A stretch of 64,000 nt of DNA, from NCBI RefSeq assembly GCF_044704955.1, contig NC_091999.1:61442001-61506000 (forward strand), read 5' to 3'. Positions 32,086-53,959 of this stretch are shown one piece after another (the first letter of the stretch is position 1; each line of letters opens with the position of its first letter). The notes under the pieces are model-generated. The model worked only from the letters and a program-made list of their open reading frames with translations, ran no database searches and had not been told where the DNA came from. Source of the DNA: Pristiophorus japonicus. Lineage: Eukaryota. Both the position numbers and the translations under genes were made by a program.

Positions 32086-32143
32086 TTTATTGTTTTTTAT
32101 TTAAGAACTGAAATGCAATCGAGACATTCTCATTGACAAGAAT
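32086..32143 (-). pseudogene. IGHM: Distal end of the IgM secretory tail ((N)SCQ*) with two AATAAA signals
   Basis: Minus strand AT TCT TGT CAA TGA (32143-32130); AATAAA at 32101-32096 and 32091-32086. Confidence 0.82.
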
Positions 32144-33367
32144 GACTAAGAAAGCAATAAAGGAAGGAAAGATAGATTACAAAGGTAAACTTGCGCAAAA
32201 CATGAAAACGGATAGTAAAAGCTTTTACCGATATGTAAAACGGAAAAGAGTGACTAAAGTAAATGTTGGTCCCTTAGAAGATGAGAAGGGGGATTTAATA
32301 ATGGGAATTGTGGAAATTGCTGAGAGCTTAAACAATTATTTTGCTTCGGTCTTCACAGTGGAAGACACAAAAACCATGCCAGAAATTGCTGGTCAAAGGA
32401 ATGTGAGAAGGGAGGACCTTGAGACAATCACTATCACTAGGGGGGTAGTGCTGGACAGGCTAATGGGACTCAAGGTAGAAAAGTCCCCCGGTCCTGATGA
32501 AATGCATCGCAGGGATAAAGAGATGGCGGAAGTTATAGCAGATGCATTCGTTAAAATCCACCAAAACTCTCTGGACTCTGGGGAGGTACCAGCGGATTGG
32601 AAAGCAGCTAATGTAACACCTCTGTTTAAAAAAGAGGGCAGACAAAAGGCAGGTAACTATTGGCCGGTTAGTTTAACATCTGTAATGGGGAAAGTGCTTG
32701 AAACTATCATTAAGGAAGAAATAAGCGGGATATCTAGATAGGAATAGTGCAATCAAGCAGACGCAGCATGGATTCATGAAGGGGAAATCATGTTTAACTA
32801 ATTTACTGGAATTCTTTGAGGATATAACGAGCATGGTGGATACAGGTGTACCGATGGATGTGCTGTATTTAGATTTTCAAAAGGCATTCGATAAGGTGCC
32901 ACACAAAAGGTTACTGCAGAAGATAAAGGCACGTGGAGTCAGAGGAAAAGTATTAGCATGGATAGAGAATTGGCTGGCTAACAGAAAGCAGAGAGTCGCG
33001 ATAAATGGGTCCTTTTTGGGTTGGAAATCGGTGGTTAGTGGTGTGCCACAGGGATGGGTGCTGGGACTACAACTGTTTACAATATATATAGATGACCTGG
33101 AAGAGGGGACAGAGTATAGTGTAACAAAATTTGCAGATGACACAAAGATTAGTGGGAAAACGGGTTGTGCAGAGGACACAGAGAGGCTGCAAAGAAATTT
33201 AGATAGGTTAGAGAATGGGCTAAGATTTGGCAGATGGAATACAATGTCGGAAAGTGTGAGGTCATCCACCTTGAGGGAAAAAAAACAGCAAAAGGGAATA
33301 TTATTTGAATGGGGAGAAATTATAACATGCTGCGATGCAGAGGGACCTGGGGGTCCTTGTGCATGAA
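32144..33367 (+). mobile_element. CR1-type LINE ORF2, left part (5'-truncated, frameshifted)
   Basis: KSPGPDEMH, VPADWKAANVTPLFKK, HGFMKGKSCLTNLLEFFE, YLDFQKAFDKVPH, SGVPQG, KFADDTK. Confidence 0.95.
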
Positions 33368-33547
33368 ACTCTTTTAGGAGCAAACAAAAAATATTAAGCC
33401 GTGCCCCCCGATCTGGGGGAAACACCAACATTTACAAGGTTTATTTTTGGCACAAAAACATATTTTTTCTCCAAGTGCCCCCTATAAAAGGGGAGGGGGA
33501 CACTAAAAGCACCGGCAATTAAAACAAATTAACTTAAAAATATGAAA

Positions 33548-36500
33548 TCAAGTTAAAATTTGGTTGCCGGGCGTGATGATGCACTCCAGTCCCTCCGGTG
33601 CCCACCTCTTGCGGAAGGCCACGAGCGTACCGGTGGACACCGCATGCTCCATCTCCAGGGACACCCTTGACCGGATGTATGCGCGGAAGAGAGGCAGGCA
33701 GTCTGGCTGAACGACCCCCTCGACCCCCCGCTGCCTGGACCGGCTGAGGGCCCCCTTGGCCGTGCCCAGGAGCAGTCCTACGAGGAGGCCCTCGGACCTA
33801 CCCGCTCCCCTCCGCACAGGGTGCCCGAAGATCAGGAGTGTGGGACTGAAGTGCAGCCAGAATTTCAGGAGCAGCCCCTTTAAATAACAAAACAGGGGCT
33901 GCAATCTCGTGCACTCAATAAAAACATGGAACACGGACTCTTGCAGACCGCAGAAATTGCAGGCGGCCTGGGAGCCCGTGAACCGGCTTAAAAATTTATT
34001 GCACGGCACTGCTCCGTGCATCACCCTCCAGGCCAAGTCCCCGGCAAATAGTGGGAGGACCCCTGCGTAGAGTGCCCTCCATCGGGGACCCCCGCCTCCT
34101 CTGGACGGCAAGATGGTACACCATGGCGTGTCCAGACGGCAGGCAAGGATGGCAAAGTTGAGAGTGTGCAGGAGCAGCCCGTACAGGAAACCCCTCCGCG
34201 CGGAACTGAAAGGCACGGAGGGGATTTCCCCGAGGCGGCTCAAGTTGTGAGGCGCCGGCCCCCGAGGGAGGTTCCGGGGTTTGGCGCCGATGAGGAATTC
34301 CGTCCGGACGGGGGTCAGTTCGGACGGGATCTCCCCACGTGCTTGAGCCTCCTCGATGCACCTAACGGAGTCAGGGCCCAGAGCTGTTCTTAGCGACTCG
34401 ATGGCATCAGCCGCGCGGCGGACGTTGGCGGAATTTAGGCGCCGCGCCAGCGTGTCTGGCGCCATCCAACCCGCTCCTCCGCCATCGAGCAGGTCCCTGA
34501 CCCTAGTCACCTCACCAGCCACAGCCCTCTCGTCCGACCGCCACCTAAAACCTCGGTCGTGGAGGTACGGATTCCAGAGCAGCGGCTCCTGCAGGACGGC
34601 CGCCACTCCAGCCGGCGGAGAGCTGCGCTTGGTGGAGACTTTGTTCCAGACCCTGGTGAGTTCCTTGTAAAAGACAGGCAGCTCCCGGAGGGCGGTCCTA
34701 GCACCCCCCAAGTTCACAAACAGGAGCTGCGTGTCGTAGTTGAGGCCGTGCTGCTGGCGGAAGAAATACATCACCAGAGCATGCCACCTAGGAGGGGGCT
34801 CGACGTAAAGGTATCTCTGCAGTGTCCAAAGACGGAAAGTCGCGAGCTGGCCGCTGACGCACACCAACGACTGACCGCCCTCCTCAAGCGGGAGACTCAG
34901 GACCGCGGCAGAGACCCAGTGCTTCCTGTTGTTCCAGAAGAAGTCCACCAGCTTCTTCTGTATCTTGGCGACAAACGCAGGGGGAGGGGTCAAAGTGACC
35001 AGCCGGTACCACAACATTGCGGCCACCAGCTGGTTTATGACTAGTGCTCGACCCCTGTAGGTCAGCACTCGGAGCAGTCCTGTCCAGCGCCCTAGGCGAG
35101 CGGCGACCTTGGCCTCCAGCTCCTGCCAGTTCGCCGGCCAGGCTCCCTCGTCGGGGCTAAGGTAGACTCCCAGATAGAGGAGATGGGTCGTGCTCCAGGC
35201 AAATGGCCTGAGCTCCTCCGGCAGGGAGTCCACCCGCCACTGACCGACCAGGAGTCCGGAACATTTCTCCCAGTTGATCCTGGCGGAGGACGCGGCTGAG
35301 TAAATGTCCTGGCACTCACAGATCCTCCGCAGGTCAGCGGGATCCTCTACCGTGAGGAGCACGTCATCGGCGTAAGCCGAGAGGACGACCTCCACGCCCG
35401 GCCCTTGCAGAGCCAGTCCCGTCAACCTCGTCCGCAGGAGGCGCAGGAAAGGCTCCACGCAAATGGCGTATAACTGGCCGGACATGGGGCATCCCTGGCG
35501 CACCCCTCTCCCAAAGCGAAGGGGCGCCGTCCAGGACCCGTTAACATTAATCAGACACTTCGCGGCGGCGTATAAAAGTCGGATCCGGGCGGCGAAATGC
35601 GTCCCGAACCCAAAAGCGCGCAGAGTTCCGAGCAGATAATTGTGATCCACCCTGTCGAACGCCTTCTCTTGGTCGAGGGATAGGAAGGCGACCGACAGAC
35701 CAGCCTCCTGGGAACAATGGATGAGGTCCCGGACCAGATGGATGTTATCGTGGATTGTCAAGCCCGGGACCGTGTAGGACTGGTCGGGGTGGATCATGTG
35801 GTCCAGCACGGCACCAAGGCGAGCAGACATCGCCCTGGCGAAGATTTTGTAGTCCGTGCTGAGGAGGGAGACCGGGCGCCAGTTCTTAAGGAGGCGGAGA
35901 TCGCCCTTCTTAGGCAGCAGGACGATGACTGCCCTGAGCCAAGAGAGGGGCATCTCCCTGGTCGCCAGACTTTCCCACAGGACCCACGCGTAGTCGCTCC
36001 CCAGGACGTCCCAGAACGCCCTGTGGAACTCCACGGTCAGCCCGTCCAGCCCCGGGGCTTTTCCCCCCGAGAGCCGGGCGAGGGCACCGGTCAGCTCCGC
36101 CAGGCTTAGCGGAGCTTCCAGATTTTCGGCGCCCTCCGGGCTGACCTTCGGCAGGTCCTACCACAAAGCTCTACGCGCTTCCTCGCTGGACGGCTCCAGA
36201 GAGAACAGAGCCCCGTAATATTCACGGGCCCTGTTGTTGACGCCCTCCGGATCCGAGACGAGAGAGCCGTCGTCGGCCAGCAGCGTCAAGAGCTGCTTAC
36301 GGACACTCTGCCTTTTTTCCAGCGAGTAGAAGAAGGGGGAGCCGCGGTCCAGATCCCGCAGGAACCGGATCCGCGACCTCACGAACGCGCCTCGGGACCC
36401 GACGAGCTGCAGGTCCTTCAGCGCGGCCTTCTTCGCTTCGTACACCGTCCGCAGGGCCGGGTCCTGGACGACTTGACCGAGACGGGACTCCAGGTCGTGC

Positions 36501-37465
36501 ACCTCTTTTTCTAGGCGCCCGACCGTGGCCGCCCGCCTCTTGGTCGACCCTCTCGCGTATTCTTGACAGAAGACGCGGACGTGAGCCTTGCCCACGTCCC
36601 ACCATAGCCTCAAGGAGGGGAAGCCCCCCTGCTTCCTTCTCCAGTCGGTCCAGAATCGACGGAACGAGTCCTGGAACCGCACGTCCTCCAGCAGCCGCTT
36701 GTTAAAATGCCAGTACACGGACCCCGTCCTCGCGCGGAGCGAAGCGAGCTCCGCCCACACCAGGTGGTGGTCCGAACACGGCACCGGCCGCATGGAGGCC
36801 GCCGGGACGCAGGAAACGTACGCCTGAGACACGTAAAGGCGGTCGACTCTGGACCATCCTACTCCAGGCCTCACCCAAGTAAAGGCGCTGGAGTCGGGAC
36901 AGAGATTTCGCCAGACGTCCACCAAGTCGAAGGACCCGAACAGGTCCCTCAACTTCTCCATCGCCGTCATGCTCTGCGGGGCACCGGAGCCGTCCCTCGC
37001 CTCGAGGGTGCAGTTAAAATCCCCCCCGAGGACAATGCAGTCGCCGACGTCGACAGAGCCAAGAAGAGCGGACACCTCTTCGAAGAAGCGCGTTTGCTGC
37101 GGGCCGGGCTGAGGGGCGTACACGTTCACGAGATGGAGTGGCACGTCCCCCAGGCGAACCGTGACATGCAGCAAGCGGCCTGGCACGGGCTCCTCGACCC
37201 CCAAGATCTCCGGCTGAAAATGCGGGGCCAGCAAGATGGCCACCCCACTAGAAGTGGCAGTGAGGTGGCTCATGCGGACCTCTCCTTGCCATTCCAGGAG
37301 CCACGTCGCTTCGTCTCCCGGAACGGTGTGGGTTTCTTGCAGGAAGCACACCGCATATTTCCCCTCCCGCAGGAGCGAAAAATTGTTAAATCTATGGCGT
37401 GCCTCTCTGCCGCCGTTGATGTTGAGGCTGGCTATGGTTATCTTCATGACAAAAGCATAGTGCAA
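33548..37465 (-). CDS. Tx1 copy A ORF2 (APE endonuclease, RT, C-terminal zinc finger) with one premature TAG at 36158-36160
   Basis: SLNING, FLQETH, NVYAP, GGDFNC, SRVDR, SDHH; KNWRPVSLL, DQEKAFDRV, RQGCPMS, AYADD, CNFC...HVFIEC; ORFs 36158-37465 and 33548-36034 are in the same frame. Confidence 0.93.
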
Positions 37466-37477
37466 CCTCTACCTAAC

Positions 37478-39579
37478 CTATTGTGGCGGGGGGGGGGAGT
37501 AGAGTCGTTTGTTGACCTCCACTCCTTCAGCAGCCCAGCGAGGAACTTTTTGAGCCGGCGCAGCTCAAGGCCTTGCGCCTTTAATAAGGGCCCGCCCGCG
37601 GCCATGGTTTTAGCGGCGGCGCGGACGGAAGCGATGAGCAACACCGGCTCGGATCATCTTTCCCGGGCCAGATGGGTTCGGTTGCGGCGACCCCGGCACT
37701 GGACCAAAAAGTCCCGGAGTTCCTCTACGGGAATGACGGGGGTATCAGCGGCGGTCACGAGGAGATCCACCGCCTCACTGGCGATGGCCTCGAGATCTTC
37801 ACCCGCGTCCTCCACCGAGTCCCCGTCCCCCTCCGGGAGGTCGTCGTCAGCAGCCGGCCCGTCGACCGCACGAGGTATGGCAAAAGGCCCGGCCGCTCCA
37901 TCTGGCCCTGGCTCTGCCCCAATCCCAACCCCAGGATCGTCGGCAGAGGAGTCCCCACTGGGCTCTTGTAAAATTGGTACTGGGTCGGGAAGCGACAGCG
38001 GAAGGGGTTCCTCCTCCGCCCCAGGAACCGGGGAACACGGAGAGACCTGGTCAAAGTAATGTTCCAGGTCCACCAAGTACCCCAGCTCCAAAGTAGGGGG
38101 CGAGGGTTGTTGTTCTTCCCCCTCCCCGCCGCCACCCCCCGGCCCAGTGTGTACAGAATCGTTAAAATTAATCCATTTTCAGTTTCTTCCGGGCCGAGCG
38201 ACTCTAGGAGGCAGATAATTAATAGCTGGGCGGGCTCAGGTTCGGCCTGTTCGGCCCCGCCTGCCTCAGTCCCGGGGACGCTCGGCCCGGCGGCTACGCA
38301 TTCCACCGCTGGCCCCACGCCCCCCACGACAGGCAGATCATTCACGCCATCCCCGGGAGGCAGAGGCCGGGCAGCCTCGACTGCCCCTCCCTCCCCGGGG
38401 ACAGATTCCTCTCGCCTACGGCGCAATTTGGGGGCGCTGGTGGGGGACGCGGGACACGCGGCGGGCACCGACTCCTCCGCGGAGGGATGTTGTTCCCCCT
38501 CCGCCTCATTGGAGCGGCGCCTCCTTTTGTTCCTGGGAGGGCGTGGAGGCAGGGAGACCTCTATGTCTGCCGAGGCCTCCCGCTCCACCCCCCCTTTTTC
38601 TTTTCTTGCCCGCGCCCGAGCGCCTCTGTGATACTGGTCAAGGGCTCAGGCACGGGCTCAGGGCACCCCGCGCTCGCCGGGACGGGGTTGGCCCGAGCGC
38701 GGTAAACAGATTGTCTGGCGCACTGAGGGGACCCGCCTCTAGATGTTTCATCTTCTTCCGCGCCTTCTTTCCGCTCGGACGCTCTCCCTCCCCCCCGCCG
38801 GAGGCCCTGAAAACAAAGGCCTCCGACGATTCCCGCGCACCTACGGCTCCCGGCACGTGGACGCTACTCGGGGGAGGGGTGGCGGCGGCGCCAGCCTTGG
38901 CCACCCTCGGTGGTTTGGCGGCCTTGGAGGCGGGGCAGTTCTTGCGAACGTGTCCCACCTCCCTACAGGCATGGCACCGCACGCCGTCCGACGTCCAGAA
39001 GACGCGGTAGGCAGTCCCCTCGTGCACCACATTAAAACTTCCCTCCGTCGTCTCCTCCCGCGCCAGCCGGACAAAGAGCTGGCGGCGGAAGGAGAACACG
39101 TGGCGCAGGCTGCTCTCCCTGAGGCCGAGCGGTATGGGGTTGATCCCTGACCTTACCTCCCCCAGTTGGTGTAGGTGAGGGAGGAGGAGCTCAGCGGAAA
39201 CAAAGGGCGGGACGTTTGACACGATGACCCTCTGCGCGGTGGCCTCGAGAGGGTGCACCGGCAGGAACGTCCCGCCTACCGTGAGCCCCTTTTCAAGGGC
39301 CAGGGACACCGGTCGCTCCGACCCCAGGAAGAACACAGCCTTCCCAGACACCTTGGAGGCCGCAACAATGGCCGAGTGGCCGACTACCCCAGCCATCGCC
39401 CGCACGCACTCCTCAATGCTCATTGTGGGGTGAGTGTAGCTCTTGACCCCGTGTTTCTTAGTTATAAGTCTGAATGGTGGCAGGGCAGCAGGAGGCACAG
39501 GAGGTGCTGTGGAAGCGGTTGCCACCTGCGCATATGTCCTCGCTGGCCCTGCCACCGGCGTGGATGGGGTCGCCATCAC
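37478..39579 (-). pseudogene. Tx1 copy A ORF1 (RRM-like, CCHC knuckle, P/A/E-rich tail), frameshifted
   Basis: VIVSNVPPF, VFSFRRQLF, CHACREVGHVRKNC; C-terminal ELRRLKKFL. Confidence 0.88.
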
Positions 39580-40527
39580 AGGGTCCCTTTAAGGCCTACA
39601 CCCACCCCAAAGTCACAGGCCTTAATGGTCTTAAATGGCCTCGTTTAAGTATATGAACAGAGGGAGCTCTGAAAGAGGCACACCTCTCCCCTAGTTGGCA
39701 ATTGGGGAGGGGCCTTGCTCCCTCTGCTCAGTTGTCTTAATTGTTCTTGTTTTTGTTCACTTGTGAGGAAAGGGCTCTCAGAGAGAGAGGGGAGAGACAG
39801 AGAAAGAGTGAAAGAGTCAGGCGGGGTGGGAAAGAGGGAAGCTGCGAGGGCTGATCTCCCCTCACAGCGATGGGTGGGCGCACTCCCCAGATGTCAAACA
39901 AAACAGTCCTTGGGGTGGTCTTCGGGTGGGTGGAGAAGGTGTCTTCACCTGGGGCAGCTGGAGCCACATAGATACACACTCCCAACGATGTTATTTAGGG
40001 TGATTGAGTTTCTTCAGCCAGGTAGCTCCAGCTATCCCAGGCTAGGCAATGGGGAGGGGTGCTTCAGTGGTGTGTGGGCCTAGCTGTAGGCAAGACCCCC
40101 ACACACACTTCAACACACACACACACACACACACACCCCGCGATGTTCCGGCCCTCGATTGGTCTTCTTTCCTCCCCCCCACCGATACAACAAAGTCTTT
40201 TTGGGGAATGCACCAAAATACACCCAACTCTGGTTGAAGAAGTCTTTCCCTCCTTCCACACTGGTAAGTTGTTGTTCTTTTTTTTCCCCTCTCTCGAACT
40301 CTTCGTAGGGATAATAATGGTGTTGCAGTCTTCTGCTCTCCTCCTCTCACTCTGGATAAATGGTAATGAAGCTCTTTCCTTCCTCCTCCTATTCCTGGTC
40401 TGTTCTCAGGGCTCAGTCAAGGCCTCCCAGACAGGAGCAAAGCAGGGAGTTCCTTCTCTCTCAGCAGCACAGCTCCAAGTGAAGAGGCCACGCCTCCAAA
40501 GCTCCACCATTGGTCCTTGTGCATCAA

Positions 40528-43500
40528 ACTCTTTTAGGAGTAAACAAAAGACTTAAACCGTGCACCCGATCTGTGGGAAACACCAACATTTACAAGTCCC
40601 TTTTTTTAATTTTAGTTTTTTTTTTTGGGGCACAGAATCAATTTTTTTTCCAAGTGCCCCCTATAAAAGGGAAGGGGGACACTAAAAGCACCGGCAATTA
40701 AAACAAATTAACTTAAAAATATAAAATCAAGTTAAAATTTGGTTGCCGGGCGTGATGATGCACTCCAGTCCCTCCGGTGCCCACCTCTCGCGGAAGGCCG
40801 CGAGCGTACCGGTGGACACCGCGTGCTCCATCTCCAAGGAGACCCTGGACCGTATGTATGCGCAGAAGAGAGGCAGGCAGTCTGGCTGAACGAACCCCTC
40901 GAACGCCTGCTGCCTGGACCGGCTGATGGCCCCCTTGGCCGTGCCCAGGAGCAGTCCTACGAGAAGGCCCTCGGACCTACCCGCTCCCCTCCGCACAGGG
41001 TGCCAGAAGATCAGGAGTGTGGGACTGAAGTGCAGCCAGAATTTCAGGAGCAGCCCCTTTAAATAGCAAAACAGGGGCTGCAACCTCGTGCACTCAATAA
41101 AAACATGGAACACGGACTGTTCCAGACCACAGAAATTACAGGCGGCCTGGGAGCCCGTGAACCGGCTTAAAAATTTATTGCACGGCACTGCTCCGTGCAC
41201 CACCCTCCAGGCCAAGTCCCTGACAAATAGTGGGAGGGCCCCTGCATAGAGTGCACTCCATCGAGGACCCCCGCCTCCTCCGGACGGCAAGATGGTACGC
41301 CATGGCGTGTAAGGACGGCAGGCGAGGATGACAAAGTTGAGAGTGTGCAGGAGCAGCCCGTACAGGAAACCCCTCCGCGCGGAACTGAAAGGCACGGAGG
41401 GGATTTCCCCGAGGCGGCTCAAGTTGTGAGGCGCCTGCTCCCGAGGGAGGTTCCGGGGTTTGGCGCCAATGAGGAATTCCGTCCAGACGGGGGTCAGTTC
41501 AGACGTGATCTCCCCGCATGCTTGAGCCTCCTCGATGCACCTAACGGAGTCGGGGCCCAGAGCTGTTTTAGCGACTCGATGGCATCGGCCGCGTGGCGGG
41601 CGTTGGCAGAATTTAAGCGCAGCGCCAGCGTGTCTGGCGCCATCCAGCCCGCTCCTCCGCAATCGAGCAGGTCCCTGACCCTGGTCACCTCACCAGCCAC
41701 AGCCCTCTCTTCCGACCGCCACATAAAACCTCGGCCGTGGAGGTACGGATTCCCGAGCAGCGGTTCCTGCAGGACGGCCGACACTCCAGCCGGCGGAGAG
41801 CTGCGCTTGGTGGAGACTTTGTTCCAGACCCTGATGAGTTCCTTGTAAAAGACAGGCAGCTCCCGGCGGACTGTCCTGACGCCCCCCACACTCACAAACA
41901 GGAGCTGCGTGTCGTAGTTGAGGCTATGCTGCTCGCGGAAGAAATACCTCGCCAGAGCACACCACCTAGGAGGGGGCTCGACCTAAAGGCATCTCTGCAG
42001 GGTCTGAAGATGGAATGTCGCGAGCTGGGCGCTGACGCACAGCAATGACTGACCGCCCTCCTCAAGCGGGAGACTCAAGACCGCGGCAGAGACCCAGTGC
42101 TTCCTGTTGTTCCAGAAGAAGTCCACCAGCTTCTTCTGTATCTTGGCGACAAACGCAGGGGCAGGGGTCAAAGTGACCAGCAGGTACCACAGCATTGCGG
42201 CCACCAGCTGGTGTATGATTAGCGCTCGACCCCTGTAGGACAGCACTCGGAGCAGTCCTGTCCAGCGCCCTAGGCGAGCGGCGACCTTGGCCTCCAGCTC
42301 CTGCCAGTTCGCCGGCCAGGCTCCCTCGTCGGGGCTAAGGTAGACTCCCAGATAGAGGAGATGGGTCGTGCTCCAGGCAAAAGGCCTGAGCTCCTCCGGC
42401 AGGGAGTCCACCCGCCACTGACCCACCAGGAGTTTGGAACATTTCTCCCAGTTGATTCTGGCGGAGGACGCGGCCGAGTAAATCTCCTGGCACTCACGCA
42501 TCCTCCGCAGGTCAGCGGGATCCTCTACCGCGAGGAGCACGTCGTCGGCGTAAGCCGAGAGGACGACTTCCACGCCAGGCCCTTGCAGAGCCAGTCCCGT
42601 CAACCTCGTCCGCAAGAGGCGCAGGAAAGGCTCCAGGCAGACGGCGTATAACTGGCCAGACATGGGGCATCCCTGGCGCACCCCTCTCCTAAAGCGAAGG
42701 GGCGCCGTCAAGGACCCATTAACCTTAATCAGACACTCCACAGCGGCGTACAAAAGTCGGATCCGGGCGACAAAATGCGTCCCGAAGCCGGAAGCGCGCA
42801 GAGTTCCGAGCAGATAGTCGTGATCCACCCTGTCGAACGCCTTCTCTTGGTCGAGGGATAGGAAGGCTACCGACAGACCAGCCTCCTGGAAATGATGGAT
42901 GAGGTCCCGGACCAGATGGATGTTATCGTGGATTGTCCGGCCCGGGACCGTGTAGGACTGGTCGGGGTGGATCATGTTGTCCAGCACGGCACCAAGGCGA
43001 GCAGACATCGCCCTGGCAAAGATTTTGTAGTCCGTGCTGAGGAGGGAGACCGGGCGCCAGTTTTTAAGGAGGCGGAGATCGCCCTTCTTAGGCAGCAGGA
43101 CGATGACTGCTCTGCGCCAAGAGAGGGGCATCTCCCCGTCGCCAGACTTTCCCCCAGGACCCGCGCGTAGTCGCCCCCCAGGACGTCCCAGAACACCCTG
43201 TGGAACTCCACGGTCAGCCCGTCCAGCCCCGGGGATATTCCCCTCGAGAGCCGGTTGAGGGCACCGGTCAGCTCCGCCAGGCTTAGCGGAGCTTGCAGAT
43301 TTTCTGCGCCCTCCGGGCTGACCTTCGGCAGGTCCTCCCACAAAACTCTATGTACTTCCTCGCTGGACGGATCCGGAGAGAACAGAGCCCCGTAATATTC
43401 ACGGGCCCTGTTGTTGACGCCCTCCGGATCCGAGAGAGAGAGCCGTCGTCGGCCAGCAGCGTCAAGCGCTGCTTACGGACACTCTGCCTTTTTTCCAGTG

Positions 43501-46500
43501 AGTAGAAGAAAGGCGGAGCCACGGTCCAGCTCCCGCAGGAATTGGATCCGCGACCTCACGAACGTGCCTCGGGACCCGACGAGCTGCAGATCCTTCAGCG
43601 CGGCCGTCTTCGCTTCGTACACCATCCGCAGGGCCGGGTCCTGGACGACTTGACCGAGACGGGACTCCAGTTCGAGCACCTCTTTTTCTAGGCACCCGAC
43701 CCTGGCCGCCCGCCTCTTGGTCGACCCCCTCGCGTACTCTTGACAGAAGACGCGGATGTGAGCCTTGCCCACGTCCCACCATAGCCTCAAGGAGGGGAAG
43801 CCACCCTGCTTCCTTCTCCTGTCGGCCCAGAAACGATGGAACGAGTCCTGGAACCCTACGTCCTCCAGCAGCTGGTTGATAAAATACCACTATGCGGACC
43901 CCGTTCTCGTGCGGAGCGAAGCGAGCTCCGCCCACACCAGGTGGTGGTCCGAACACGGCACCGGCCGCTTGGAGGCCGCCAGGACGCAGGAAACGTATGC
44001 CCGAGACACGTAAACGCGGTCGACTGTGGACCATCCTACTCCAGGCCTCACCCAAGTAAAGGCGCTGGAGTCGGGATGGAGATTTCGCCAGACGTCCACC
44101 AAGTCGAAGGACCCGACCAGGTCCCTCAACTTCTCCATCACCGTCATGCTCTGCGGGGCACTGGAGCGGTCCCTCGCCTCGAGGGTGCAGTTAAAATCCC
44201 CCCCCGAGGATAATGCAGTCGCCGACGTCGACGGAGCCAAGAAGAGCGAACACTTCTTCGAAGAAGCGCACTTGCTGCGGGCCGGGCTGACGGGCGTACA
44301 CGTTCACGAGATGGAGTGGCACGTCCCCCAGGCGAACCGTTACGTGCAGCAAGCGGCCTGGAACGGGATCCACGACCCCCAAGATCTCCGGCTGAAAATG
44401 CGGGGCCAACAAGATGGCCACCCCACTAGAAGTGGTAGTGAGGTGCCTCATGCGGACCTCTCCTTGCCATTCCAGGAGCCACGTGGCTTCATCTCCCGGA
44501 ACGGTGTAGGTTTCTTGCAGGAAGCACACCGCATATTTCCCCTCCCGCAGGAGCGAAAAATTGTCAAATCTACGGCGTGCCTCTCTGCCGCCGTTGATGT
44601 TGAGGCTGGCTATGATTATCTTCATGACTAGAGCATAGTGCAACCTCTACCTAACCTATTGTGGGGGCGGGGAGTGGAGTCGTTTGTTGATCTCCACTCC
44701 TTCAGCAGCCCAGCGAGGAACTTTTTGAGCCGGCGCAGCTCAAGGCCTTGCGCCTTTGATAAGGGCCCGCCCGCGGCCATGGTTTTAGCTGCGGTGCGGA
44801 CGGAAGCAACGAGCAACACTGGCTCAGACCATCTTTCCCGGGCCAGACGGGCTTGATCGCGGCGACCCCGGCACTGGACCAAAAAGTCCCGGAGTTCCTT
44901 TACAGGAATGAGGAGGGTCTCAGCGGCGGCCGCGAGCAGATCCACCGCCTCACTGGCGATGGTCTCTAGATCTTCTCCTGCGTCCCCCACCGAGTCCCCG
45001 TCAACCTCCGGGAGGTTGCCGCTATCAGCCGGCCCGTCGACCGCACGAGATACGGCAAACGGCCCGGCCGCTCCATTTGGCCCTGGCTCTGCTCCGATCC
45101 CACCCCCAGGATCGTCAGCAGAGGTGTCCCCACTGGGCTCTTCTAAAATTGGTGCTGGGTCGGGAAGCTTCAGCGGAAGGGGTTCCTCCTCCGCCCCAGG
45201 ATCCGGGGAACATGGAGAGACCTGGTTTAGGAAATTCTCCAGGTCCATCAAGTCCCTCAGCTCCAAAGTAGGGGGCGAGCTTTGTTGTTCTCTACCCTCC
45301 CCACCGCCAACCCCGGCCCAGCGTGTGGATGTATATTACAGTTGTCTGCAGTGTCAGTTTCTGCCGAGTCGAGCAAATCCCGGGGGAAGTTGGGTATTGG
45401 CTGGGCGGGCTCAGGTTTGGCCTTTTCGGCCCCGCCCGCCTCAGTCCCCGAGACGCTCGACCCAGCGGCCACACATTCTTCCACGGTCCCCACGCCCCTC
45501 ACGACAGGCAGATCTTTCACGCCATCCCCGGGAGGCAGCGGCTGGGCAGCCTCGAATGTCTCACCCTCCCCGGGGACAGACTCCTCTCGCCTACAGCGCA
45601 GCTTGGGGGCGCTGGTGGGGGACGCGGGACACGCGGCGGGCACCGCCTCCTCCGCGGAGGGATGTTGTTCCCCCTCCGCCTCATTGGAGCGGCGCCTCCT
45701 TTTGTTCCTGGGAGTGAGCGGAGGCAAGGAGACCCCCATGTCTGCCAAGGCCTCCTGCTCCACTCCCCCCTTTTCCTTATCATGCCCGCGCCCGAACCCC
45801 TCTGCGGTATTGATCGAGGGCTCGGGCACGGGCTCAGGGCACCCCGCGCTCGCCGGTGACGGGGTTGGGCTGAGCGCGATAAACAGATTATCTGGCGCAC
45901 CGAAGGGACCCGGCTCGAGATGTTTCGTCTTCTTCCGCGCCTTCCTTCCGGCCGGACGCTCTCCCTCCCCCCCGCCGGATGCCGTGAAAACAAAGGCCCC
46001 CGACGATGCCCGCGCACCGACGGCTTCCGGCACGCGAACGCAACTAGGGGGAGGGGTGGTGGCGGCGCCAGCCTTGGCCGCCTTCGGTGGTTTGGCGGCT
46101 TTGGAGGCGGGGCAGTTCTTGCGAACGTGCCCCACCTCCCTACAGGCATGGCAACGCACGCCGTCCGACGTCCAGAAGACGCGGTAGGCAGTCCCCTCGT
46201 GCACCACATTAAAATTGCCCTCTGTTGTCTCCTCCCGCGGCAGCCGGACAAAGAGCTGGCGGCGGAAGGAGAACACATGGCGCAGGCTGTTCTCCCTGAG
46301 GCCGAGCGGTATGGGGTTGATCCCCGACCTTACCTCCCCCAGTTGGTGTAGGTGAGGGAGGAGGAGCTCAGCGGGAACAAAGGGCGGGACGTTCGATAGA
46401 ATGACCCTCTTTGCGGTGGCCTCGAGAGGGTCCACCGGCAGGAACGTCCTGCCCACCGTGAGCCCCTTTTCGACGGCCAGGGACACCGCCCGCTCCGACG

Positions 46501-47663
46501 CCAGGAAGAACACGGCCTTCCCAGACATCTTGGAGGCTGCGACAATGGTCGAGGTGCCGACTACCCCAGCCATCGCACGCACGCACTGCTCGATGCTCAT
46601 TGTGGGGTGAGTGTAGCTCTTGACCCCGTGTTTTTTAGTTATCAGTCTGAATGGTGGCAGGCAGCAGGAGACGCAGGAGGTGCCGTGGAAGCGCTTGCCA
46701 CCTGCGCATATGGCCTAGCTGGCCCTGCCACCGGCGTGGATGCGGTCGCCATCACGGGGTACCTTTAACGGCTACACCCACCCCAAAGTCACAGGCCTTA
46801 ATGGTCTTAAATGGCCTCGTTTAAATATTTGAACAGAGGGAGCTCTGAAAGAGGCACACCTCTCCCCTAGTTGGCAATTGGGGAGGGGCCTTGCTCCCTC
46901 TGCTCAGTTGTCTTAATTGTTTGTTTTTTTTTAATTAGGAGGAAAGGGCTCTCAGAGAGAGAGGGGAGAGACAGAGAGAGAGATAGAGTGAGGGGGTGTG
47001 GGAAAGAGGGAATCTGCGAGCGCAGGTCTCCCCTCACAGCGGTGGGTGGGTGCACTCCCAGATGTCAAACAAAACAGTCTTTGGGGTGGTCTTCGGGTGG
47101 GTGGAGAAGATGTCTTCACCTGGGGCAGCTGGAGCCACACAGGTACACACTCCCAACCATGTTAATTAGGGTGATTGAGTTTCTTCAGCCTGGTAGCTCC
47201 ATCTATCCCAGGCTAGGCAATGGGGGAGGGGTGCTTCAGTGGAGTGTGGGCCTAGCTGTAGGCAAGACCCCCACACACACTTCCACACACACACACACAC
47301 CCTCCGCGATGTTCCGGCCCTCGATAGGTCTTCTTTCCTCCCCCCACCGATACAACAAAGTCTATTGGGGAATGCACCAAAACACACCCACATCTGGTTG
47401 AAGAAGTCTTTCCCTCCTTCCACACAGTTGTTTTTTCCCCCTTTCTCCAAATCTTTGTAGAATTAATCAAGTTGTTGCAGTCTTCAGCTCTCCTCCTATC
47501 CCTCTGGAAGAATGGTAATATAGCCCCTTCCTTCCTCCTCCTATTCCTGGGCTGGTCTCAGGGCTCACTCAAGGCCTCCCAGACAGGAGCAAAGCAGGGA
47601 GTTCCTTCTCTCTCAGCAGCACAGCTCCAAGTGAATAGGCCACGCCTCCAAAGCGCCACCATT
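40528..47663 (-). mobile_element. Tx1 copy B (full-length; ORF1 ~44655-46753 and ORF2 40727-44643, both frameshifted)
   Basis: Same motifs as copy A, split over several frames; followed by gttccttgtgcataa at 47664-47678. Confidence 0.95.
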
Positions 47664-47678
47664 GTTCCTTGTGCATAA

Positions 47679-50600
47679 ACTCCTTTAGGAGTAAACAAAA
47701 AACATTAAACCGTGCCCCCGATCTGGGGGAAACGCCAACATTTACAACGTCCTTTTTTTTTTGGGCACAGAATTGAATTTTTATCCAAGTGCCCCCTACA
47801 AAAGGGGAGGGGGACACGAAAAGCACCGGCAATTAAACACCTAAAGTCAAATTAAAATTTGGTTGCCGGGCGTGATGATGCACTCCAGTCCCTCCGGTGC
47901 CCACCTCTCGTGGAAGGCCGCGAGCGTACCGGTGGACACCGCGTGCTCCATCTCCAAGGACAGCTTGGACTGGATGTAAGAGCGGAAGAGAGGCAGGCAG
48001 TCTGGCTGAACGACCCCCACGACCGCCCGCTGCCTGGACCGGCTGATGGCCCCCTTGGCCGTGCCCAGGAGCCGTCCTACGAGGAGGCCCTCGGACCTAC
48101 CCGCTCCCCTCCGCACAGGGTGCCCGAAGATCAGGAGTGTGGGACTGAAGTGCAGCCAGAATTTCAGGAGCAGCCCCTTTAAATAACAAAATAGGGGCTG
48201 CAACCTCGTGCACTCAATAAAAACATGGAACACGGACTCTTCTAGACCGCAGAAATTACAGGCGGCCTGGGAGCCCGTGAACCGGCTTAATAATTTATTG
48301 CACGGGACTGCTCCGTGCACCACCCTCCAGGCCAAGTCCCCGATAAATACTGGGAGGACGCCTGCGTAGAGTGCCCTCCATCGGTGACCCCCGCCTCTTC
48401 CGGACGGCAAGATGGTACGCCATGGCGTGTCCGGACGGCAGGCGAGGTTGGCAAAGTTGAGAGTGTGCAGGAGCAGCCCGTACAGGAAACCCCTCCGCGC
48501 GGAACTGAAAGGCACGGATGGGATTTCCCCGAGGCGGCTCAAGTTGTGAGGCGCCGGCCCCCGAGGGAGGTTCCGGGGTTTGGCGCCAATGAGGAATTCT
48601 GTCCGGACGGGGGTCAGTTCGGACGGGATCTCCCCACGTGCTTGAGCCTCCTCGACGCACCAAACGGAGTCGGGGACCAGAGCTGTTTTTAGCGACTCGA
48701 TGGCATCGGCCGCGTGGCGGACGTTGGCAGAATTTAGGCGCCGCGCCAGCGTGTCTGGCGCCATCCAGCCCGCTCCTCCGCCATCGAGCAGGTCCCTGAC
48801 TCTGGTCACCTCACCAGCCACAGCCCTCTCATCCGACCGCCACAAAAAACCTCAGTCGTGGAGGTACGGATTCCCGAGCAGCGGTTCCTGCAGGACGGCC
48901 GCCACTCCAGCCGGCGGAGAGCTGCGCTTGGTGGAGACTTTGTTCCAGACCCTGATGAGTTCCTTGTAAAAGACAGGCAGCTCCCGGAGGGCGGTCCTGA
49001 CGCCCCCACACTCACAAACAGGAGCTGCATGTTGTTGTTGAGGCCGTCCTGCTGGCGAAATAAATACATTGCCAGAGCACGCCACCTAGGAGGAGGCTCG
49101 ACGTAAAGATATCTCTGCAGGGTCTGAAATGGAAAGTCGCGAGCTGGGCGCTGACGCACAACAACGACTGACCACCCTCCCCAAGCGGGAGACTCAAGAC
49201 CGCGGCAGAGATCCAGTGCTTCCTGTTGTTGCAGAAGTCCACCAGCTTCTTCTGTATCTTGGCGACAAACGCAGGGGGAGGGCTCAAAGTGACCAGCCGC
49301 TACCACAGCATAGCGGCCACCAGCTGGTTTATGACTAGAGCTCAACCCCTGTAGGACAGCACTTGGAGCAGTCCTGTCCAGCGGCCTAGGCGAGCGGCGA
49401 CCTTGGCCTCCAGCTCCTGCCAGTTCGCCACCCACACTTCCTCGTCGGGGCTAAGGTAGACTCCCAGATAGAGGAGATGGGTCGTGCTCCAGGCAAAAAG
49501 CCTGAGCTCCTCCGGCAGGGAGTCCACCCGCCACTGACCCACCAGGAGTCCGGAACATTTCTCCCAATTGATTCTGGCGGAGGACGCGGTCGAGTAAATC
49601 TCCTGGCACTCACACATCCTCCGCAGGTCAGCGGGATCCTCTACCGCGAGGAGCACGTCATCGGCGTAAGCCGAGAGGACGACTTCCACGCCCGGCCCTT
49701 GCAGAGCCAGTCCCGTCAACCTCGTCCACAAGAGGCGCAGGAAAGGCTCCACCGCATATTTCCCCTCCCGCAGGAGCGAAAAATTGTCAAATCTACGGCG
49801 TGCCTGTCTGCCGCCGTTGATGTTGAGGCTGGCTATGGTTATCTTCATGACTAGAGCATAGTGCAACCTCTACCTAACCTATTGTGGGGGGGGAGTGGAG
49901 TCGTTTGTTGACCTCCACTCCTTCAGCAGCCCAGCGAGGAACTTTTTGAGCCGGCGCAGCTCAAGGTATTGCGCCTTTGATAAGGGCCCGCCCGCGGCCA
50001 TGGTTTTAGCTGCGGTGCGGACGGAAGCGACGAGCAGCCCCGGCTCGGACCATCTTTCCCGGGCCAGACGGGCTTGGTCGCGGCGACCCCGGCACTGGAC
50101 CAAAAAGTCCCGGAGTTCCTTTACAGGAATGAGGAGGGTCTCAGCGGCGGCCGCGAGCAGATCCACCGCCTCACTGGCGATGGTCTCTAGATCTTCTCCT
50201 GCGTCCCCCACCGAGTCTCCGTCCCCCTCCGGGAGGTCGCCGCCAGCAGCCGGCCCATCGACCGCACGAGGTACGGCAAACCGCCCGGCCGCTCCATCTG
50301 GCCCTGGCTCTGCCCCGATCCCACCCCCACGATCGTCGGCAGAGGAGTCCCCACTGAGCATTTTTAAAAGTGGTGCTGGGTCGGGAAGCGACAGCGGAAG
50401 GGGTTCCTCCTCCGCCCCAGGAGCCGGGGAACACGGAGAGACCTGGTTTAGGAAATTCTCCAGGTCCACCAAGTATCCCAGCTCCAAAGTATGGGGCGAG
50501 GGTTGTTGTTCTTCCCCCTCCCCGCCGCCTCCCCCCGGCCCAGCGTGTGGATGCATATTACAGTTGTCTGCAGTGTCAGCTTCTGCCGAGTCGAGCAAAT

Positions 50601-52859
50601 CCCGGGGCAAGTTGGGTATTGGCTGGGCGGCCTCAGGTTCGGCCTTTTCGGCCTCGCCCGCCTCAGTCCCCGGGACGCTCGACCCGGCGGCTACGGATTC
50701 TTCCGCTGGCCCCACGCCCCCCACGACAGACAGATCTTTCACATCATCCCCGGGAGGCAGCGGCTGGGCAGCCTCGACTGCCTCACCCTCCCCGGGGACA
50801 GATTCCTCACGCCTACAGCGCAGTTCGGGGGCGCTGGTGGGGGACGCGGGACATGCGACGGGCACCGACTCCTCCGCGGAGGGATGTTGTTCTCCCTCCA
50901 CCTCATTGGAGCGGCGCCTCCTTTTTTTCCTGGGGGTGCGCGGAGGCAGGGAGACCCCCATGTCTGCCGAGGCCTCCCGCTCCACTCCCCCCTTTTTCTT
51001 GTCTTGCCCACGCCCGAACCCCTCGATGATACTAGTCAAGGGCTCGGGCACGGGTTCAGGGCACCCCGCGCTCGCCGGTGACTGGGTTTGGCCTTGCGTG
51101 GTAAACAAGTTGTTTGGCGCACCGAGGGGATGTTTCGCCTTCTTCCGCGCCTTCTTTCCGGCCGTGAAAACAAAGGCCCCCGATGATGCCCGCGCACCTA
51201 TGGCTCCCGGCAAGCGGATGCTACTAGGGGGAGGGGTGGCGGCGGCGCCAGCCTTGGACGCCCTCGGTGGTTTGGCAGCCTTGTTGGCGGGGCAGTTCTT
51301 GCGAACATGCCCCACCTCCCTGCAGGCATGGCACCGCACGCCATCCGACGTCCAGAAGACGCCGTAGGCAGTCCCCTCGTGCACCACATTAAAACAACCC
51401 TCCGTCGTCTCCTCCCGCGCCAGCCGGACAAAGAGCTGGCGGCGGAAGGAGAACACATGGCGCAGGCTGGTCTCCCTGAGGCCGAGCGGTATGGGGTTGA
51501 CCCCGACCTTACCTCCCCCAGTTGGTGTAGGTGAGGGAGGAGGAGCTCAGCGGGAACAAAGGGCGGGACGCTTGAAATGACGACCCTCTGCGTGGTGACC
51601 TCGAGAAGGTCCACTGGCAGGAAAGTCCCGCCCACCGTGAGCCCCTTTTCAAGGGCCAGGGACACCGGTCGCTCCGACCCCAGGAAGAACACGGCCTTCC
51701 CAGACATCTTGGAGGCTGCGACAATGGCCGAGGGGCCGACTACCCCAGCCATCGCCCGCGCACACTCCTCAATGCTCATTGTGGGGTGAGTGTAGCCCTT
51801 GACCCCGTGTTTTTTAGTTATCAGTCTGAATGGTGGCAGGGCAACAGGAGGCGCAGGAGGCGCCGTGGATGTGGACGCCGCCTGCGCATAATTCCTAGCT
51901 GGCCCTGCCACCAGCGTGGATGGGGTCGCCATCACGGGGTCCCTTTAAGCGCGACACCCACCCCAAAGTCACAGGCCTTAATGGTCTTAACTGGCCTCGT
52001 TTAAGTTCTTAACAGCGGGAGCTCTGAAAGAGGCACACCTCTCCCCTAATTTGCAATTGGGGAGGGGCCTTGCTCCCTCTGCTCAGTTGTCTTAATTGTT
52101 CTTGTCTTTTTTTCCCAATTGGGAGGAAAGGCTCTCAGAGAGAGAGGGGGGAGACAGAGAGAGAGACAGAGTGATGGGGTGTGGGAAAGAGGGAGGCTGC
52201 AAGGGCAGGTCTCCCTTCACAGTAATGGGTGGGTGCACTCCCCAGATGGCAAACAAAACAGTCTTTGGGGTGATCTTCGGCTGGGGGGAGAAGATGTCTT
52301 CACCTGGGGCAGCTGGAGCCACACAGGTACACACTCCCAACGATGTTAATTAGGGTGATTCAGTTTCTTCAGCCTGGTAGCTCCAGCTATCCCAGGCTAG
52401 GCAATTGGGTGAGGGGTGCTTCAGTGGTGTGTGGGCCTAGCTGTAGGCAAGACCCCCACACACACTTCCACACACACCCCCCCCCCCCCCCGCGGTGTTC
52501 TGGCCCTCGATTGGTCTTCTTTCCTCCCCCCACCGATACAACAAAGTATTTTTGGTGAATGCACCAAAACACACCCACCTTTGGCTGAAGAAGTCTTTCC
52601 CTCCTTCCACACTGGTAAGTTGTTGTTCTTTTTTCCACCTCTTTCCAACTCTTTGTTGAAATAATGAAGGTGTTGCAGTCTTCTGCTCTCCTCCTCTCAC
52701 TCTAGATGAATGGTAATGAAGCCCCTTCCTATCTCCTGTTCCTGGGCTGGTCTCAGGGCTCACTCCAGGCCTTCCAGACAGAAGCTAAAGCAGGGAGTTC
52801 CTTCTCTCAAAGCAGCCAGGCTCCAAGTGCATAGGCCACGCCTCCAAAGCTCCATCATT
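47679..52859 (-). mobile_element. Tx1 copy C (~5.2 kb, with a ~1.9-kb deletion in ORF2)
   Basis: ORF1 49879-51935; ORF2 jumps from EGKYAV to EPFLRLL at ~49750; followed by GGTCCTTGTGCATGAA at 52860-52875. Confidence 0.95.
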
Positions 52860-52875
52860 GGTCCTTGTGCATGAA

Positions 52876-53067
52876 ACTCTTTTTCGGAGTAAACAAAAAA
52901 CATTAAACCGTGCCCCCCCCCCCGATCTGGGGGAAACACCAAACATTTACAGGCCCTTTTATTTTTTGTGGTATTTTTTGGGGGGTTTTTTTTGGCACAA
53001 AAACATATTTTTTCTCCAAGTGCCCCCTATAAAAGGGGAGGGGGACACTAAAAGCACCGGCAATTAA
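52876..53067 (-). mobile_element. Tx1 copy D: 3'-UTR-only fragment (~190 bp)
   Basis: Homologous to 33368-33522, 40528-40701 and 47679-47836 (actctttt...gtgccccctataaaaggggagggggacac...caattaa). Confidence 0.9.
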
Positions 53068-53761
53068 TGTTAGTTTGCAGGTGCAGCAGGTAATCAGGAA
53101 GGCGAATGGAATGTTGACATTCATTGCCAGAGAGATGGAGTACAAAAGCAGGGAGGTCCTTCTGCAACTGTATAGGGTATTGGTGAGGCCGCACCTGGAG
53201 TACTGTGTGCAGTTTTGGTCACCTTACTTAAGGAAGGATATACTAGCTTTGGAGGGGGTACAGAGACGATTCACGAGGCTGATTCAGGAGATGATAGGGT
53301 TACCTTATGATGATAGATTGAGTAGACTGGGTCTTTACTCGTTGGAGTTCAGAAGGATGAGGGTTGATCCATAGAAACATTTAAAACAATGAAAGGCATA
53401 GACAAGATAGAGCAGAGAGGTTGTTTCCACTGCTCGGGGAGACTATAACTAGAGGGCACAGCCTCAAAATACAGGGGAGCCAATTTAAAACTCAGTTGAG
53501 AAGGAATTTCTTCTCCCACAGAGTTGTGAATCGGTGGAATTATCTGCAAAGGGGAGGAATTGAGGATAGCTCATTGAATGTATTCAATTCACAGAAAGAT
53601 AGATTTTTAACCAATAAGGGAATTAAGAGTTATGGGGAGCGGGCGGGTAAGTGGAGCTGAGTCCACGACCAGATCAGCCATGATCTTGTTGAATGGCGGA
53701 GCAGGCTCCAGATGCAAGATGGCCTACTCCTGTTCCTAATTCTCATGTTCTTATGTTCTTA
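53068..53761 (+). mobile_element. CR1-type LINE, right part (ORF2 C-terminus, 3' UTR, (TTCTTATG)n tail)
   Basis: QVQQVIRKANGML...LVRPHLEYCVQFWSP...LEGVQRRFTR directly continues the RT broken at 33367; tail atgttcttatgttctta. Confidence 0.95.
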
Positions 53762-53959
53762 TGAAGGTGTCCATCAGAACAAGGAAAATGCTTTACCACT
53801 GGATTTATTGACGGTTCTGTTGGTGATTATCAAGGAGATCGCTTCATGTCCCACCACACAGGTGTGAGAGGCGCCGCTGGCCCACTCCTCGGATGCAATG
53901 GATAGTAGGCTGTACATGAAGAAGGAGGACAGACACGGCTGGTTCCCGCGGATCTTTCG
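53762..53959 (-). pseudogene. IGHM: IgM Cmu4 plus proximal secretory tail, internally deleted, copy 2
   Basis: ctacag acceptor, then [11 protein letters not shown] fused to [29 protein letters not shown]...[10 protein letters not shown]; after a frameshift, LVLMDTF. Confidence 0.87.

What the first reader, a model, noticed from the sequence alone, without database searches (positions are those of the whole stretch)
33352..53067. Candidate CR1-targeting, sequence-specific Tx1 retrotransposon: four insertions stacked at one site in a LINE RT gene
Seen: the CR1 RT breaks after ...GACCTGGGGGTCCTTGTGCATGAA (33367) and resumes at 53068. Between lie four antisense Tx1 copies. The CR1 16-mer GGTCCTTGTGCATGAA recurs at every junction (33352, 40512, 47664, 52860), always followed by the Tx1 3' end ACTC(T/C)TTT. 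Known: Tx1-clade APE elements are often target-specific (Xenopus Tx1L/Tx2L in Tx1D/Tx2D transposons; Keno in U2 snRNA genes), and target-primed reverse transcription duplicates the target. Inference: the endonuclease nicks after GCATGAA and each insertion regenerates a 16-bp target, so the family is a hyperparasite using an abundant LINE as a landing pad and inactivating it. I do not know of a described CR1-targeting Tx1 but cannot confirm novelty.
Basis: partly seen in the sequence, partly recalled or inferred. Interest (0 to 1): 0.92.

Follow-up and report, generated by a model that had tools for sequence, protein, structure and literature searches.

The report
Tx1 LINE stacked in CR1 site
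A jumping gene of the Tx1 type has landed four times at the same 16-letter spot inside another jumping gene (a CR1 LINE), and most landings rebuilt the spot so copies pile up head to tail; aiming at other repeats is a known Tx1 habit, and CR1 is a new target for it.

Summary
The CR1-derived 16-mer GGTCCTTGTGCATGAA occurs four times (0, 1, 2 and 0 mismatches; 0.05 expected by chance). Each time the 3' end of an antisense Tx1-lineage LINE follows directly. There are three copies with complete 5' ends (7144, 7136 and 5180 bp) and one 192-bp 5'-truncated copy.

Contigs of two related species show the 16-mer is native CR1 sequence. The empty site reads GCATGAA|TCCCAAAAAGTTAGTTTGCAG.

Contigs of the same organism hold at least six differently 5'-truncated Tx1 copies. 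Each is joined to positions 33352-33356 of the 16-mer and then to another Tx1 3' end. None of these junctions exists in this window, so landings at this site recur elsewhere in the genome.

ORF2 (APE + RT + zinc motif) is 45-49% identical to Xenopus Tx1L and sits in its clade with 100/100 support.

One correction: the truncated copy has no target duplication. It joins CR1 through a 6-9 bp target deletion.

The closest precedent is crocodilian Tx1-Mar/SINEU-3, with a 16-bp duplication and tandem insertions around it. I found no paper describing a CR1-targeting Tx1.

This scan already reported the same phenomenon in at least eight other stretches of this genome. The "inactivating hyperparasite" gloss is not shown. 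Verdict: new member of a known kind.

The parts
32133..33367 (+). Left part of the target CR1 LINE (degenerate ORF2 with an RT domain), ending ...GACCTGGGGGTCCTTGTGCATGAA. The 5' limit of the CR1 was not determined.
   Evidence: Pfam RVT_1 in ORF 32776-33366. Very many contigs from four runs lie on it.
33352..33367 (+). T0: the native CR1 16-mer target, with the inferred first-strand nick after 33367.
   Evidence: Contigs of related species run through it into intact CR1 (table 7 and records 21, 22, 30 of table 8).
33368..40511 (-). E1: full-length Tx1-lineage element, 7144 bp. 3' UTR 33368-33547. ORF2 37447-33548, with APE 36767-37432, RT 35165-35914, zinc motif 33908-34036 and one in-frame stop at 36158-36160. 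ORF1 pieces 38638-39579 and 37755-38588. 5' UTR about 39580-40511.
40512..40527 (+). T1: duplicated 16-mer, 1 mismatch.
40528..47663 (-). E2: full-length copy, 7136 bp, 92% identical to E1, with many frame breaks.
47664..47679 (+). T2: duplicated target, GTTCCTTGTGCAT-AA (one substitution plus a 1-nt deletion, or 2 mismatches).
47680..52859 (-). E3: copy with complete 5' and 3' ends and an internal deletion (junction near 49750) that removes the equivalent of E1 35459-37348 (APE and the start of RT).
52860..52875 (+). T3: duplicated 16-mer, 0 mismatches.
52876..53067 (-). e4: 5'-truncated copy holding only the last part of the 3' UTR. It is joined to CR1 through AA microhomology with a 6-9 bp target deletion and no duplication.
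   Evidence: (intact site from X5).
53068..53763 (+). Right part of the target CR1: the C-terminal part of ORF2 and the 3' UTR, ending in three copies of the octamer TTCTTATG (53740-53763).

Best explanation
This is a site-specific non-LTR retrotransposon of the Tx1 lineage, with an APE endonuclease, RT and a C-terminal zinc motif. Its target is a ~16-bp sequence, GGTCCTTGTGCATGAA, in the C-terminal part of the ORF2 of a CR1 LINE family, about 0.7 kb from the CR1 3' end.

Shown: the element always lies antisense to CR1. Its 3' end always abuts ...GCATGAA. Full-length copies have the same 5' end, abutting a second copy of the 16-mer. The 16-mer is native CR1 sequence.

Inferred: the endonuclease nicks the CR1 sense strand after GCATGAA. 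The freed 3' OH primes reverse transcription of the element RNA (target-primed reverse transcription). The other strand is cut 12-16 bp away, so a full insertion is flanked by a 12-16 bp duplication that rebuilds the target.

At this locus the truncated copy e4 probably came first, because it has a target deletion and no duplication. E3, E2 and E1 then landed in the retained or regenerated 16-mer, giving T-E1-T-E2-T-E3-T-e4.

Because the sequence to the right of the nick had become Tx1 3' end, recognition must rest mainly on the 16-mer side. Read-through transcripts that carry the 16-mer may help by pairing with the primer strand (inferred).
For: - Four 16-mer/3'-end junctions and three identical 5'-end/16-mer junctions lie in this window.
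- e4 is 5'-truncated and fused to CR1 by microhomology, which is typical of target-primed reverse transcription.
- The intact CR1 site in related species B and C contains the 16-mer and continues TCCCAAAAAGTTAGTTTGCAG (table 7).
- In contigs of the same organism (X1), Tx1-internal positions 33572, 33747, 34043, 34195, 34259 and 34486 are each joined, with 1-4 extra letters, to 33353-33356. A full-length 5' end reading GCCTCCAAAGCTCCACGAAT, which differs from all three in this window, is joined to 33352 (table 5c). These are other loci with differently truncated copies stacked on the same site.
- The 3' UTR variants are interleaved (E1 and e4 versus E2 and E3). Of 13 positions where E1 departs from at least 90% of the family, 10 are not shared with E2 or E3.
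- APE, RVT_1 and zf-RVT domains are present. ORF2 is 45-49% identical to Xenopus Tx1L ORF2 and falls in a 100/100 clade with it.
- There is a published precedent for a 16-bp duplication and tandem insertions sandwiching it in Tx1-mobilised elements (PMC4494074).
Against: - CR1 sequence beyond the 16-mer next to Tx1 3' ends elsewhere is therefore not shown by my own data, only by unchecked earlier notes.
- The contig joints show only stack junctions (Tx1, 16-mer, Tx1).
- No nicking assay exists, so the cut positions are inferred.
- The three long copies are about equally distant from each other (about 94% in the 3' 1.25 kb), so their order of arrival is not resolved.
- All copies here are broken, so current activity is unknown.
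Confidence: 0.85

Rival explanations
1. One insertion into this CR1 was followed by local tandem amplification, through unequal crossing-over or replication slippage between the 16-bp duplications. On this reading the array says nothing about repeated targeting.
For: The three long copies have identical 5' and 3' boundaries and are about equidistant from each other. Two minority letters (33827, 33888) are shared by all three.
Against: e4 is a separately truncated copy with its own junction. The 3' UTR variants are interleaved, with E1 and e4 differing from E2 and E3. E3 differs from E1 and E2 at family-polymorphic positions 33541, 33552 and 33680. A 16-bp homology is a poor substrate for unequal exchange. 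Other loci show differently truncated copies on the same 16-mer (table 5c).
Confidence: 0.06
2. The 16-mer belongs to the element's own terminus, or the element targets its own end, so the match to CR1 at 33352 is incidental. Arrays would then form by self-targeting or by end-to-end template jumping of read-through RNAs within a single event.
For: Every internal junction shows only the 16-mer and no further CR1 sequence. The contig joints I could see are all Tx1/16-mer/Tx1. Template jumping between RNA molecules is known for LINE reverse transcriptases (from memory, not checked here).
Against: The 16-mer is contiguous with CR1 on the left. It is present in intact CR1 copies of two other species with no Tx1 attached (X5 records 21 and 22, X9 record 30). 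The start of the retained 16-mer varies between 33352 and 33356 with extra letters, as expected for second-strand joining rather than a fixed RNA end (table 5c). Earlier unchecked scan notes report CR1-hosted arrays in at least eight other stretches.
Confidence: 0.05
3. The array is an assembly artefact: a repeat mis-joined or expanded by the assembler.
For: It is a 20-kb tandem array of a very abundant repeat. About 151,000 contigs of X1 lie on the 2-kb stretch that was tested, which spans both CR1 and Tx1.
Against: The copies differ by 6-11% and by large indels, and the 16-mers differ from each other. An artefact would give near-identical units. Stack junctions are seen independently in short-read contigs.
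Confidence: 0.02

Closest known systems
Tx1L / Tx1D of Xenopus laevis (type element of the Tx1 clade)
   Same: Same ORF2 architecture. The RT piece is 49% identical over 99% of its length, and the APE plus linker is 45% identical. Both fall in the same 100/100 clade. Tx1L inserts at one specific site inside another transposable element, and its endonuclease nicks that site specifically (PMC1950540, PMC6719617, PMC4494074).
   Different: The Tx1L target is a DNA transposon (Tx1D, piggyBac-type), whereas here it is a LINE (CR1) coding region. The APE hairpin loop implicated in DNA reading differs: FTWVRPGVGWSRVDR here against FTYVRVRDGHVSQSRIDR in Tx1L, three residues shorter.
Tx1-Mar families and SINEU-3 of crocodilians (Kojima 2015, PMC4494074)
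   Same: Both target one site in an abundant, old transposon family. Both give a 16-bp target duplication, and tandem insertions sandwiching the duplication are read as sequential insertions.
   Different: Their target is Mariner-N4_AMi, a DNA transposon. Tx1-Mar clusters with Keno, whereas the alligator TX1 sampled in my tree lies outside the clade of the window element. Other crocodilian Tx1 families target LTR retrotransposons, Harbinger elements or microsatellites. None is reported in CR1.
R1/R2-type rDNA-specific LINEs
   Same: They show precise site-specific target-primed reverse transcription into a multicopy sequence. Read-through transcripts that carry target sequence may help initiation (from memory for R1Bm; co-transcription is discussed in PMC4494074).
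   Different: They belong to different clades (R2 has a restriction-like endonuclease). Their target is a host gene, not a transposon. They are usually not stacked head to tail in long arrays.

Membership tests
Tx1 clade of APE-type non-LTR retrotransposons | ORF2 with an N-terminal APE endonuclease, a central RT and a C-terminal zinc-binding motif | tested here: met
   Pfam Exo_endo_phos (E 6e-12), RVT_1 (E 2e-36) and zf-RVT (E 8e-5, below the gathering score). ORF2 is ~1299 codons against 1308 in Tx1L.
Tx1 clade of APE-type non-LTR retrotransposons | The RT/ORF2 groups with Tx1 elements in a phylogeny | tested here: met
   The best named hits are Tx1 149-kDa proteins. The ML tree puts it in a 100/100 clade with Xenopus Tx1 YTX2 and turtle elements. 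Human L1 ORF2p is far weaker (E 2e-25 against 6e-124). No L1 outgroup was included in the tree.
Tx1 clade of APE-type non-LTR retrotransposons | ORF1 homologous to Tx1 ORF1 | not tested
   The ORF1 pieces have no Pfam hit. They were not compared with Xenopus ORF1.
Target-specific LINE (Kojima's criterion: more than 20% of flanks are one sequence type) | The same flanking sequence at independent insertions | tested here: inconclusive
   All 4 insertions in this window meet it, and at least 7 further junction types in same-organism contigs share the 16-mer.
Target-specific LINE | The endonuclease cleaves the target specifically | not testable with these tools
   This needs a nicking assay.
CR1 clade (identity of the target LINE) | RT-bearing LINE whose 3' end carries an octamer microsatellite | tested here: met
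   RVT_1 is present. Three copies of TTCTTATG stand at 53740-53763. The octamer motif is cited as a conserved CR1 hallmark in PMC4316615.
CR1 clade (identity of the target LINE) | The RT groups with CR1 rather than L2 or Rex1 in a phylogeny | not tested
   No reference CR1 or L2 proteins were fetched.

The most novel reading that the evidence does not exclude
The element is a true hyperparasite with an effect on its target family. By landing antisense in CR1 ORF2 and building stacks whose read-through transcripts run into CR1 as antisense RNA, it would both disrupt full-length CR1 copies and feed silencing of CR1, and so shape CR1 dynamics in cartilaginous-fish genomes. Nothing here tests this, and nothing excludes it.
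Probability: 0.06. Interest if true: 0.8.

Novelty: new member of a known kind. Interest (0 to 1): 0.45.

Why it matters
It adds a LINE coding region to the list of Tx1 targets, which so far comprises snRNA, rRNA and tRNA genes, microsatellites, satellites, DNA transposons and LTR elements.

It is a natural APE-type endonuclease with an apparently long recognition site of about 16 bp, mostly on one side of the nick. It is closely related to the biochemically tractable Tx1L endonuclease but has a different DNA-reading loop. That pairing is useful for working out how APE nucleases acquire specificity, and for engineering targeted integration.

The self-renewing landing pad also explains how multi-copy head-to-tail LINE arrays build up in a very repeat-rich genome. 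Repeat annotators should treat such arrays as serial insertions and not as satellite-like duplications.

Tried and rejected
No other loci could be fetched.
- The old Tx1L papers PMC85248 and PMC362770 are not held. The length of the Tx1L duplication therefore could not be checked and is not cited.
- BLAST and tblastn of the CR1 flanks and the Tx1 ORFs against the window found no further Tx1 copy and no unoccupied CR1 site of this subfamily. Only a distant CR1-like fragment turned up at about 10700-11260.
- The RNA fold of the 3' UTR plus target is not better than shuffles (z -1.64). I make no claim of a structured tail beyond two G/C hairpin-like inverted repeats conserved in all four copies.
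- I considered searching the protein collection with the junction-spanning ORF 32877-33431. I dropped it because one search returned no protein above 65% identity, so this species' copies are evidently not in that collection.
- Summed contig depth cannot serve as copy number or site occupancy, as the tool itself states.
- Five literature searches found no CR1-targeting Tx1. Repbase and Dfam could not be queried.
Full report
**Observation**

The 16-mer GGTCCTTGTGCATGAA occurs at 33352, 40512, 47664 and 52860 with 0, 1, 2 and 0 mismatches. Chance expectation is 0.05 matches. Each occurrence is followed directly by ACTC(T/C)TTT....

BLAST of the first unit against the window resolves four head-to-tail copies on the - strand, with no copy outside the array:

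| Copy | Coordinates | Length | Notes |
|---|---|---|---|
| E1 | 33368-40511 | 7144 bp | reference copy |
| E2 | 40528-47663 | 7136 bp | 92% identical to E1 |
| E3 | 47680-52859 | 5180 bp | 89-92% identical; both ends complete; internal deletion equal to E1 35459-37348 |
| e4 | 52876-53067 | 192 bp | only the end of the 3' UTR |

The three long copies share the same 5' terminus...GCCTCCAAAGCTCCACCATT on the + strand, which abuts the next 16-mer.

**What the parts are**

- E1 encodes an APE endonuclease (36767-37432), an RT (35165-35914) and a zinc motif (33908-34036).
- These lie in one ~1299-codon frame running 37447 to 33548. It is interrupted by a single in-frame stop at 36158-36160.
- The ORF1 region has no Pfam match. 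It is frameshifted in E1.
- The RT piece is 49% identical over 99% of its length to the Xenopus Tx1 149-kDa protein, and about 50% identical to sea-turtle elements.
- The APE plus linker is 45% identical to Tx1L (E 6e-124). Human L1 ORF2p scores only E 2e-25.
- In an ML tree the window element and an ENA protein (P0002) are sisters. They sit inside a 100/100 clade with Xenopus Tx1 and turtle elements, apart from alligator TX1 and the teleost elements. It is therefore a Tx1-lineage LINE close to the type element.

**The host element**

- The host is a degenerate LINE with an RT domain.
- Its reading frame runs ...DLGVLVHE up to 33367 and VSLQVQQVIRKANGML... from 53069.
- It ends in three copies of the octamer TTCTTATG at 53740-53763.
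- An octamer microsatellite tail is cited as a conserved CR1 hallmark (PMC4316615).
- The insertion site therefore lies about 0.7 kb from the CR1 3' end, and the Tx1 copies are antisense to CR1.

**Is the 16-mer CR1 sequence or element sequence?**

I laid contigs of four runs on 32600-34600. In two other organisms (X5, X9) contigs run through 33352-33367 as part of CR1. In X5 they continue TCCCAAAAAGTTAGTTTGCAGGTGCAGCAG, which is the uninterrupted CR1 (HE-SQK-VSLQVQQ). So the 16-mer is native CR1, and the empty site is GCATGAA|TCCCAAAAAGTT....

This also corrects one detail. At 53067/53068 the truncated copy e4 (...GGCAATTAA) is joined to (T)GTTAGTTTGCAG. That means 6-9 CR1 bases are lost, there is AA(A) microhomology, and no 16-mer is present. 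e4 made a target deletion and no duplication.

**Do landings at this site recur elsewhere?**

In contigs of the same organism (X1), Tx1-internal positions 33572, 33747, 34043, 34195, 34259 and 34486 are each joined, with 1-4 extra letters, to 33353-33356. From there the contig runs on into the 16-mer and a Tx1 3' end. A full-length 5' end reading GCCTCCAAAGCTCCACGAAT is joined to 33352 (table 5c; 54 further rows were not shown).

None of these junctions exists in this window. They come from other loci where differently 5'-truncated copies sit on the same site.

Variable truncation points joined to one fixed target position are the signature of independent target-primed reverse transcription events. 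The slightly variable start of the retained target (33352-33356) gives a duplication of 12-16 bp.

**Independent insertions or local duplication at this locus?**

- e4 has its own junction.
- The 3' UTR comes in two variants that are interleaved along the array. E1 and e4 share GGCACAAAAACATATTTTTTCTCC. E2 and E3 share GGCACAGAAT..ATTTTT.TCC.
- At family-polymorphic positions 33541, 33552 and 33680, E3 differs from E1 and E2.
- Of 13 positions where E1 departs from at least 90% of the family, 10 are not shared with E2 or E3.
- The three long copies are about equidistant from each other (about 94% in the 3' 1.25 kb).

This favours serial insertion. It does not fix the order of arrival.

**Mechanism (inferred)**

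1. The endonuclease nicks the CR1 sense strand after GCATGAA.
2. The freed 3' OH primes cDNA synthesis on the element RNA, whose sense strand ends ...CCTAAAAGAGT.
3. The second strand is cut 12-16 bp away, so a full insertion duplicates the target.

After the first landing the sequence to the right of the nick is Tx1 3' end and no longer CR1. Later landings therefore show that recognition rests mainly on the 16-mer side.

Every copy is followed by the 16-mer in its own sense orientation. Read-through RNA would be complementary to the primer strand and could fix the start point. This is an inference, by analogy with rDNA-specific LINEs recalled from memory.

The APE hairpin loop that reads DNA in L1 endonuclease (PMC1950540) is RPGVGW in both E1 and E2. 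In Tx1L it is RVRDGHVSQ, three residues longer. That is compatible with a different target.

**Comparison with known systems**

Tx1 elements are known to aim at other repeats:
- Tx1L into the DNA transposon Tx1D.
- Keno into U2 genes.
- Kibi and Koshi into microsatellites.
- Crocodilian Tx1-Mar into Mariner-N4_AMi.
- Other crocodilian families into LTR elements or Harbinger elements (PMC4494074; PMC6719617).

SINEU-3, mobilised by Tx1-Mar, has a 16-bp duplication and tandem copies sandwiching it. The author interprets these as sequential insertions, which is the same architecture as here.

Five full-text searches found no Tx1 reported in CR1 or in any LINE. Repbase and Dfam could not be consulted. 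I therefore class this as a new member of a known kind, with a new target.

**Earlier notes of this scan**

The same phenomenon was already reported in at least eight other stretches of this genome, one of them ending 2.6 kb before this window. A different Tx1-like family aimed at an LTR-like repeat was also noted. These are unchecked AI notes. They agree with my reading, and I use them only as leads.

**Limits**

I could not make the genome-wide flank logo.
- CR1 sequence beyond the 16-mer at other Tx1 3' ends is not shown by my own data.
- All runs laid were contigs, so depth cannot give copy number or site occupancy.
- The claim that the element 'inactivates' CR1 as a hyperparasite is untested. 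This CR1 copy is itself degenerate, and the site near the CR1 3' end is also carried by dead 5'-truncated copies.

Noticed in passing
window 36158-36160 (- strand): E1's ~1299-codon ORF2 is open from 37447 to 33548 except for one in-frame stop. E2 has many breaks, and E3 lacks the APE and the start of RT.
   Followed up: partly
window 33404-33470, 40590-40640, 47745-47765, 52950-52995: The middle of the 3' UTR is a hypervariable T-rich stretch that differs in length in all four copies, and few contigs lie on it. On either side are two conserved G/C hairpin-like inverted repeats (GTGCCCCC...GGGGGACAC). The fold is not significantly better than shuffles (z -1.64).
   Followed up: partly
window 33538-34600, run X10: In a small run of the same organism, of unknown library type, summed contig depth falls about 100-fold from the Tx1 3' end inward, while the large DNA run is flat. 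This may be RNA or a bias from 5'-truncated copies. It cannot be interpreted from contigs.
   Followed up: no
window 33496-34162, run X5 record 23: A related organism (B) holds a 668-nt contig about 95% identical to the Tx1 RT C-terminal region, together with intact CR1 sites. The family, or a close relative, is therefore shared between species.
   Followed up: no
window about 10700-11260 (- strand): A distant CR1-like ORF2 fragment, 41-43% identical in protein to the left part of the target CR1. It does not reach the Tx1 site.
   Followed up: no
window 53740-53763: The target LINE ends in three copies of the octamer TTCTTATG, a CR1-type microsatellite tail, in a cartilaginous-fish element.
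   Followed up: partly
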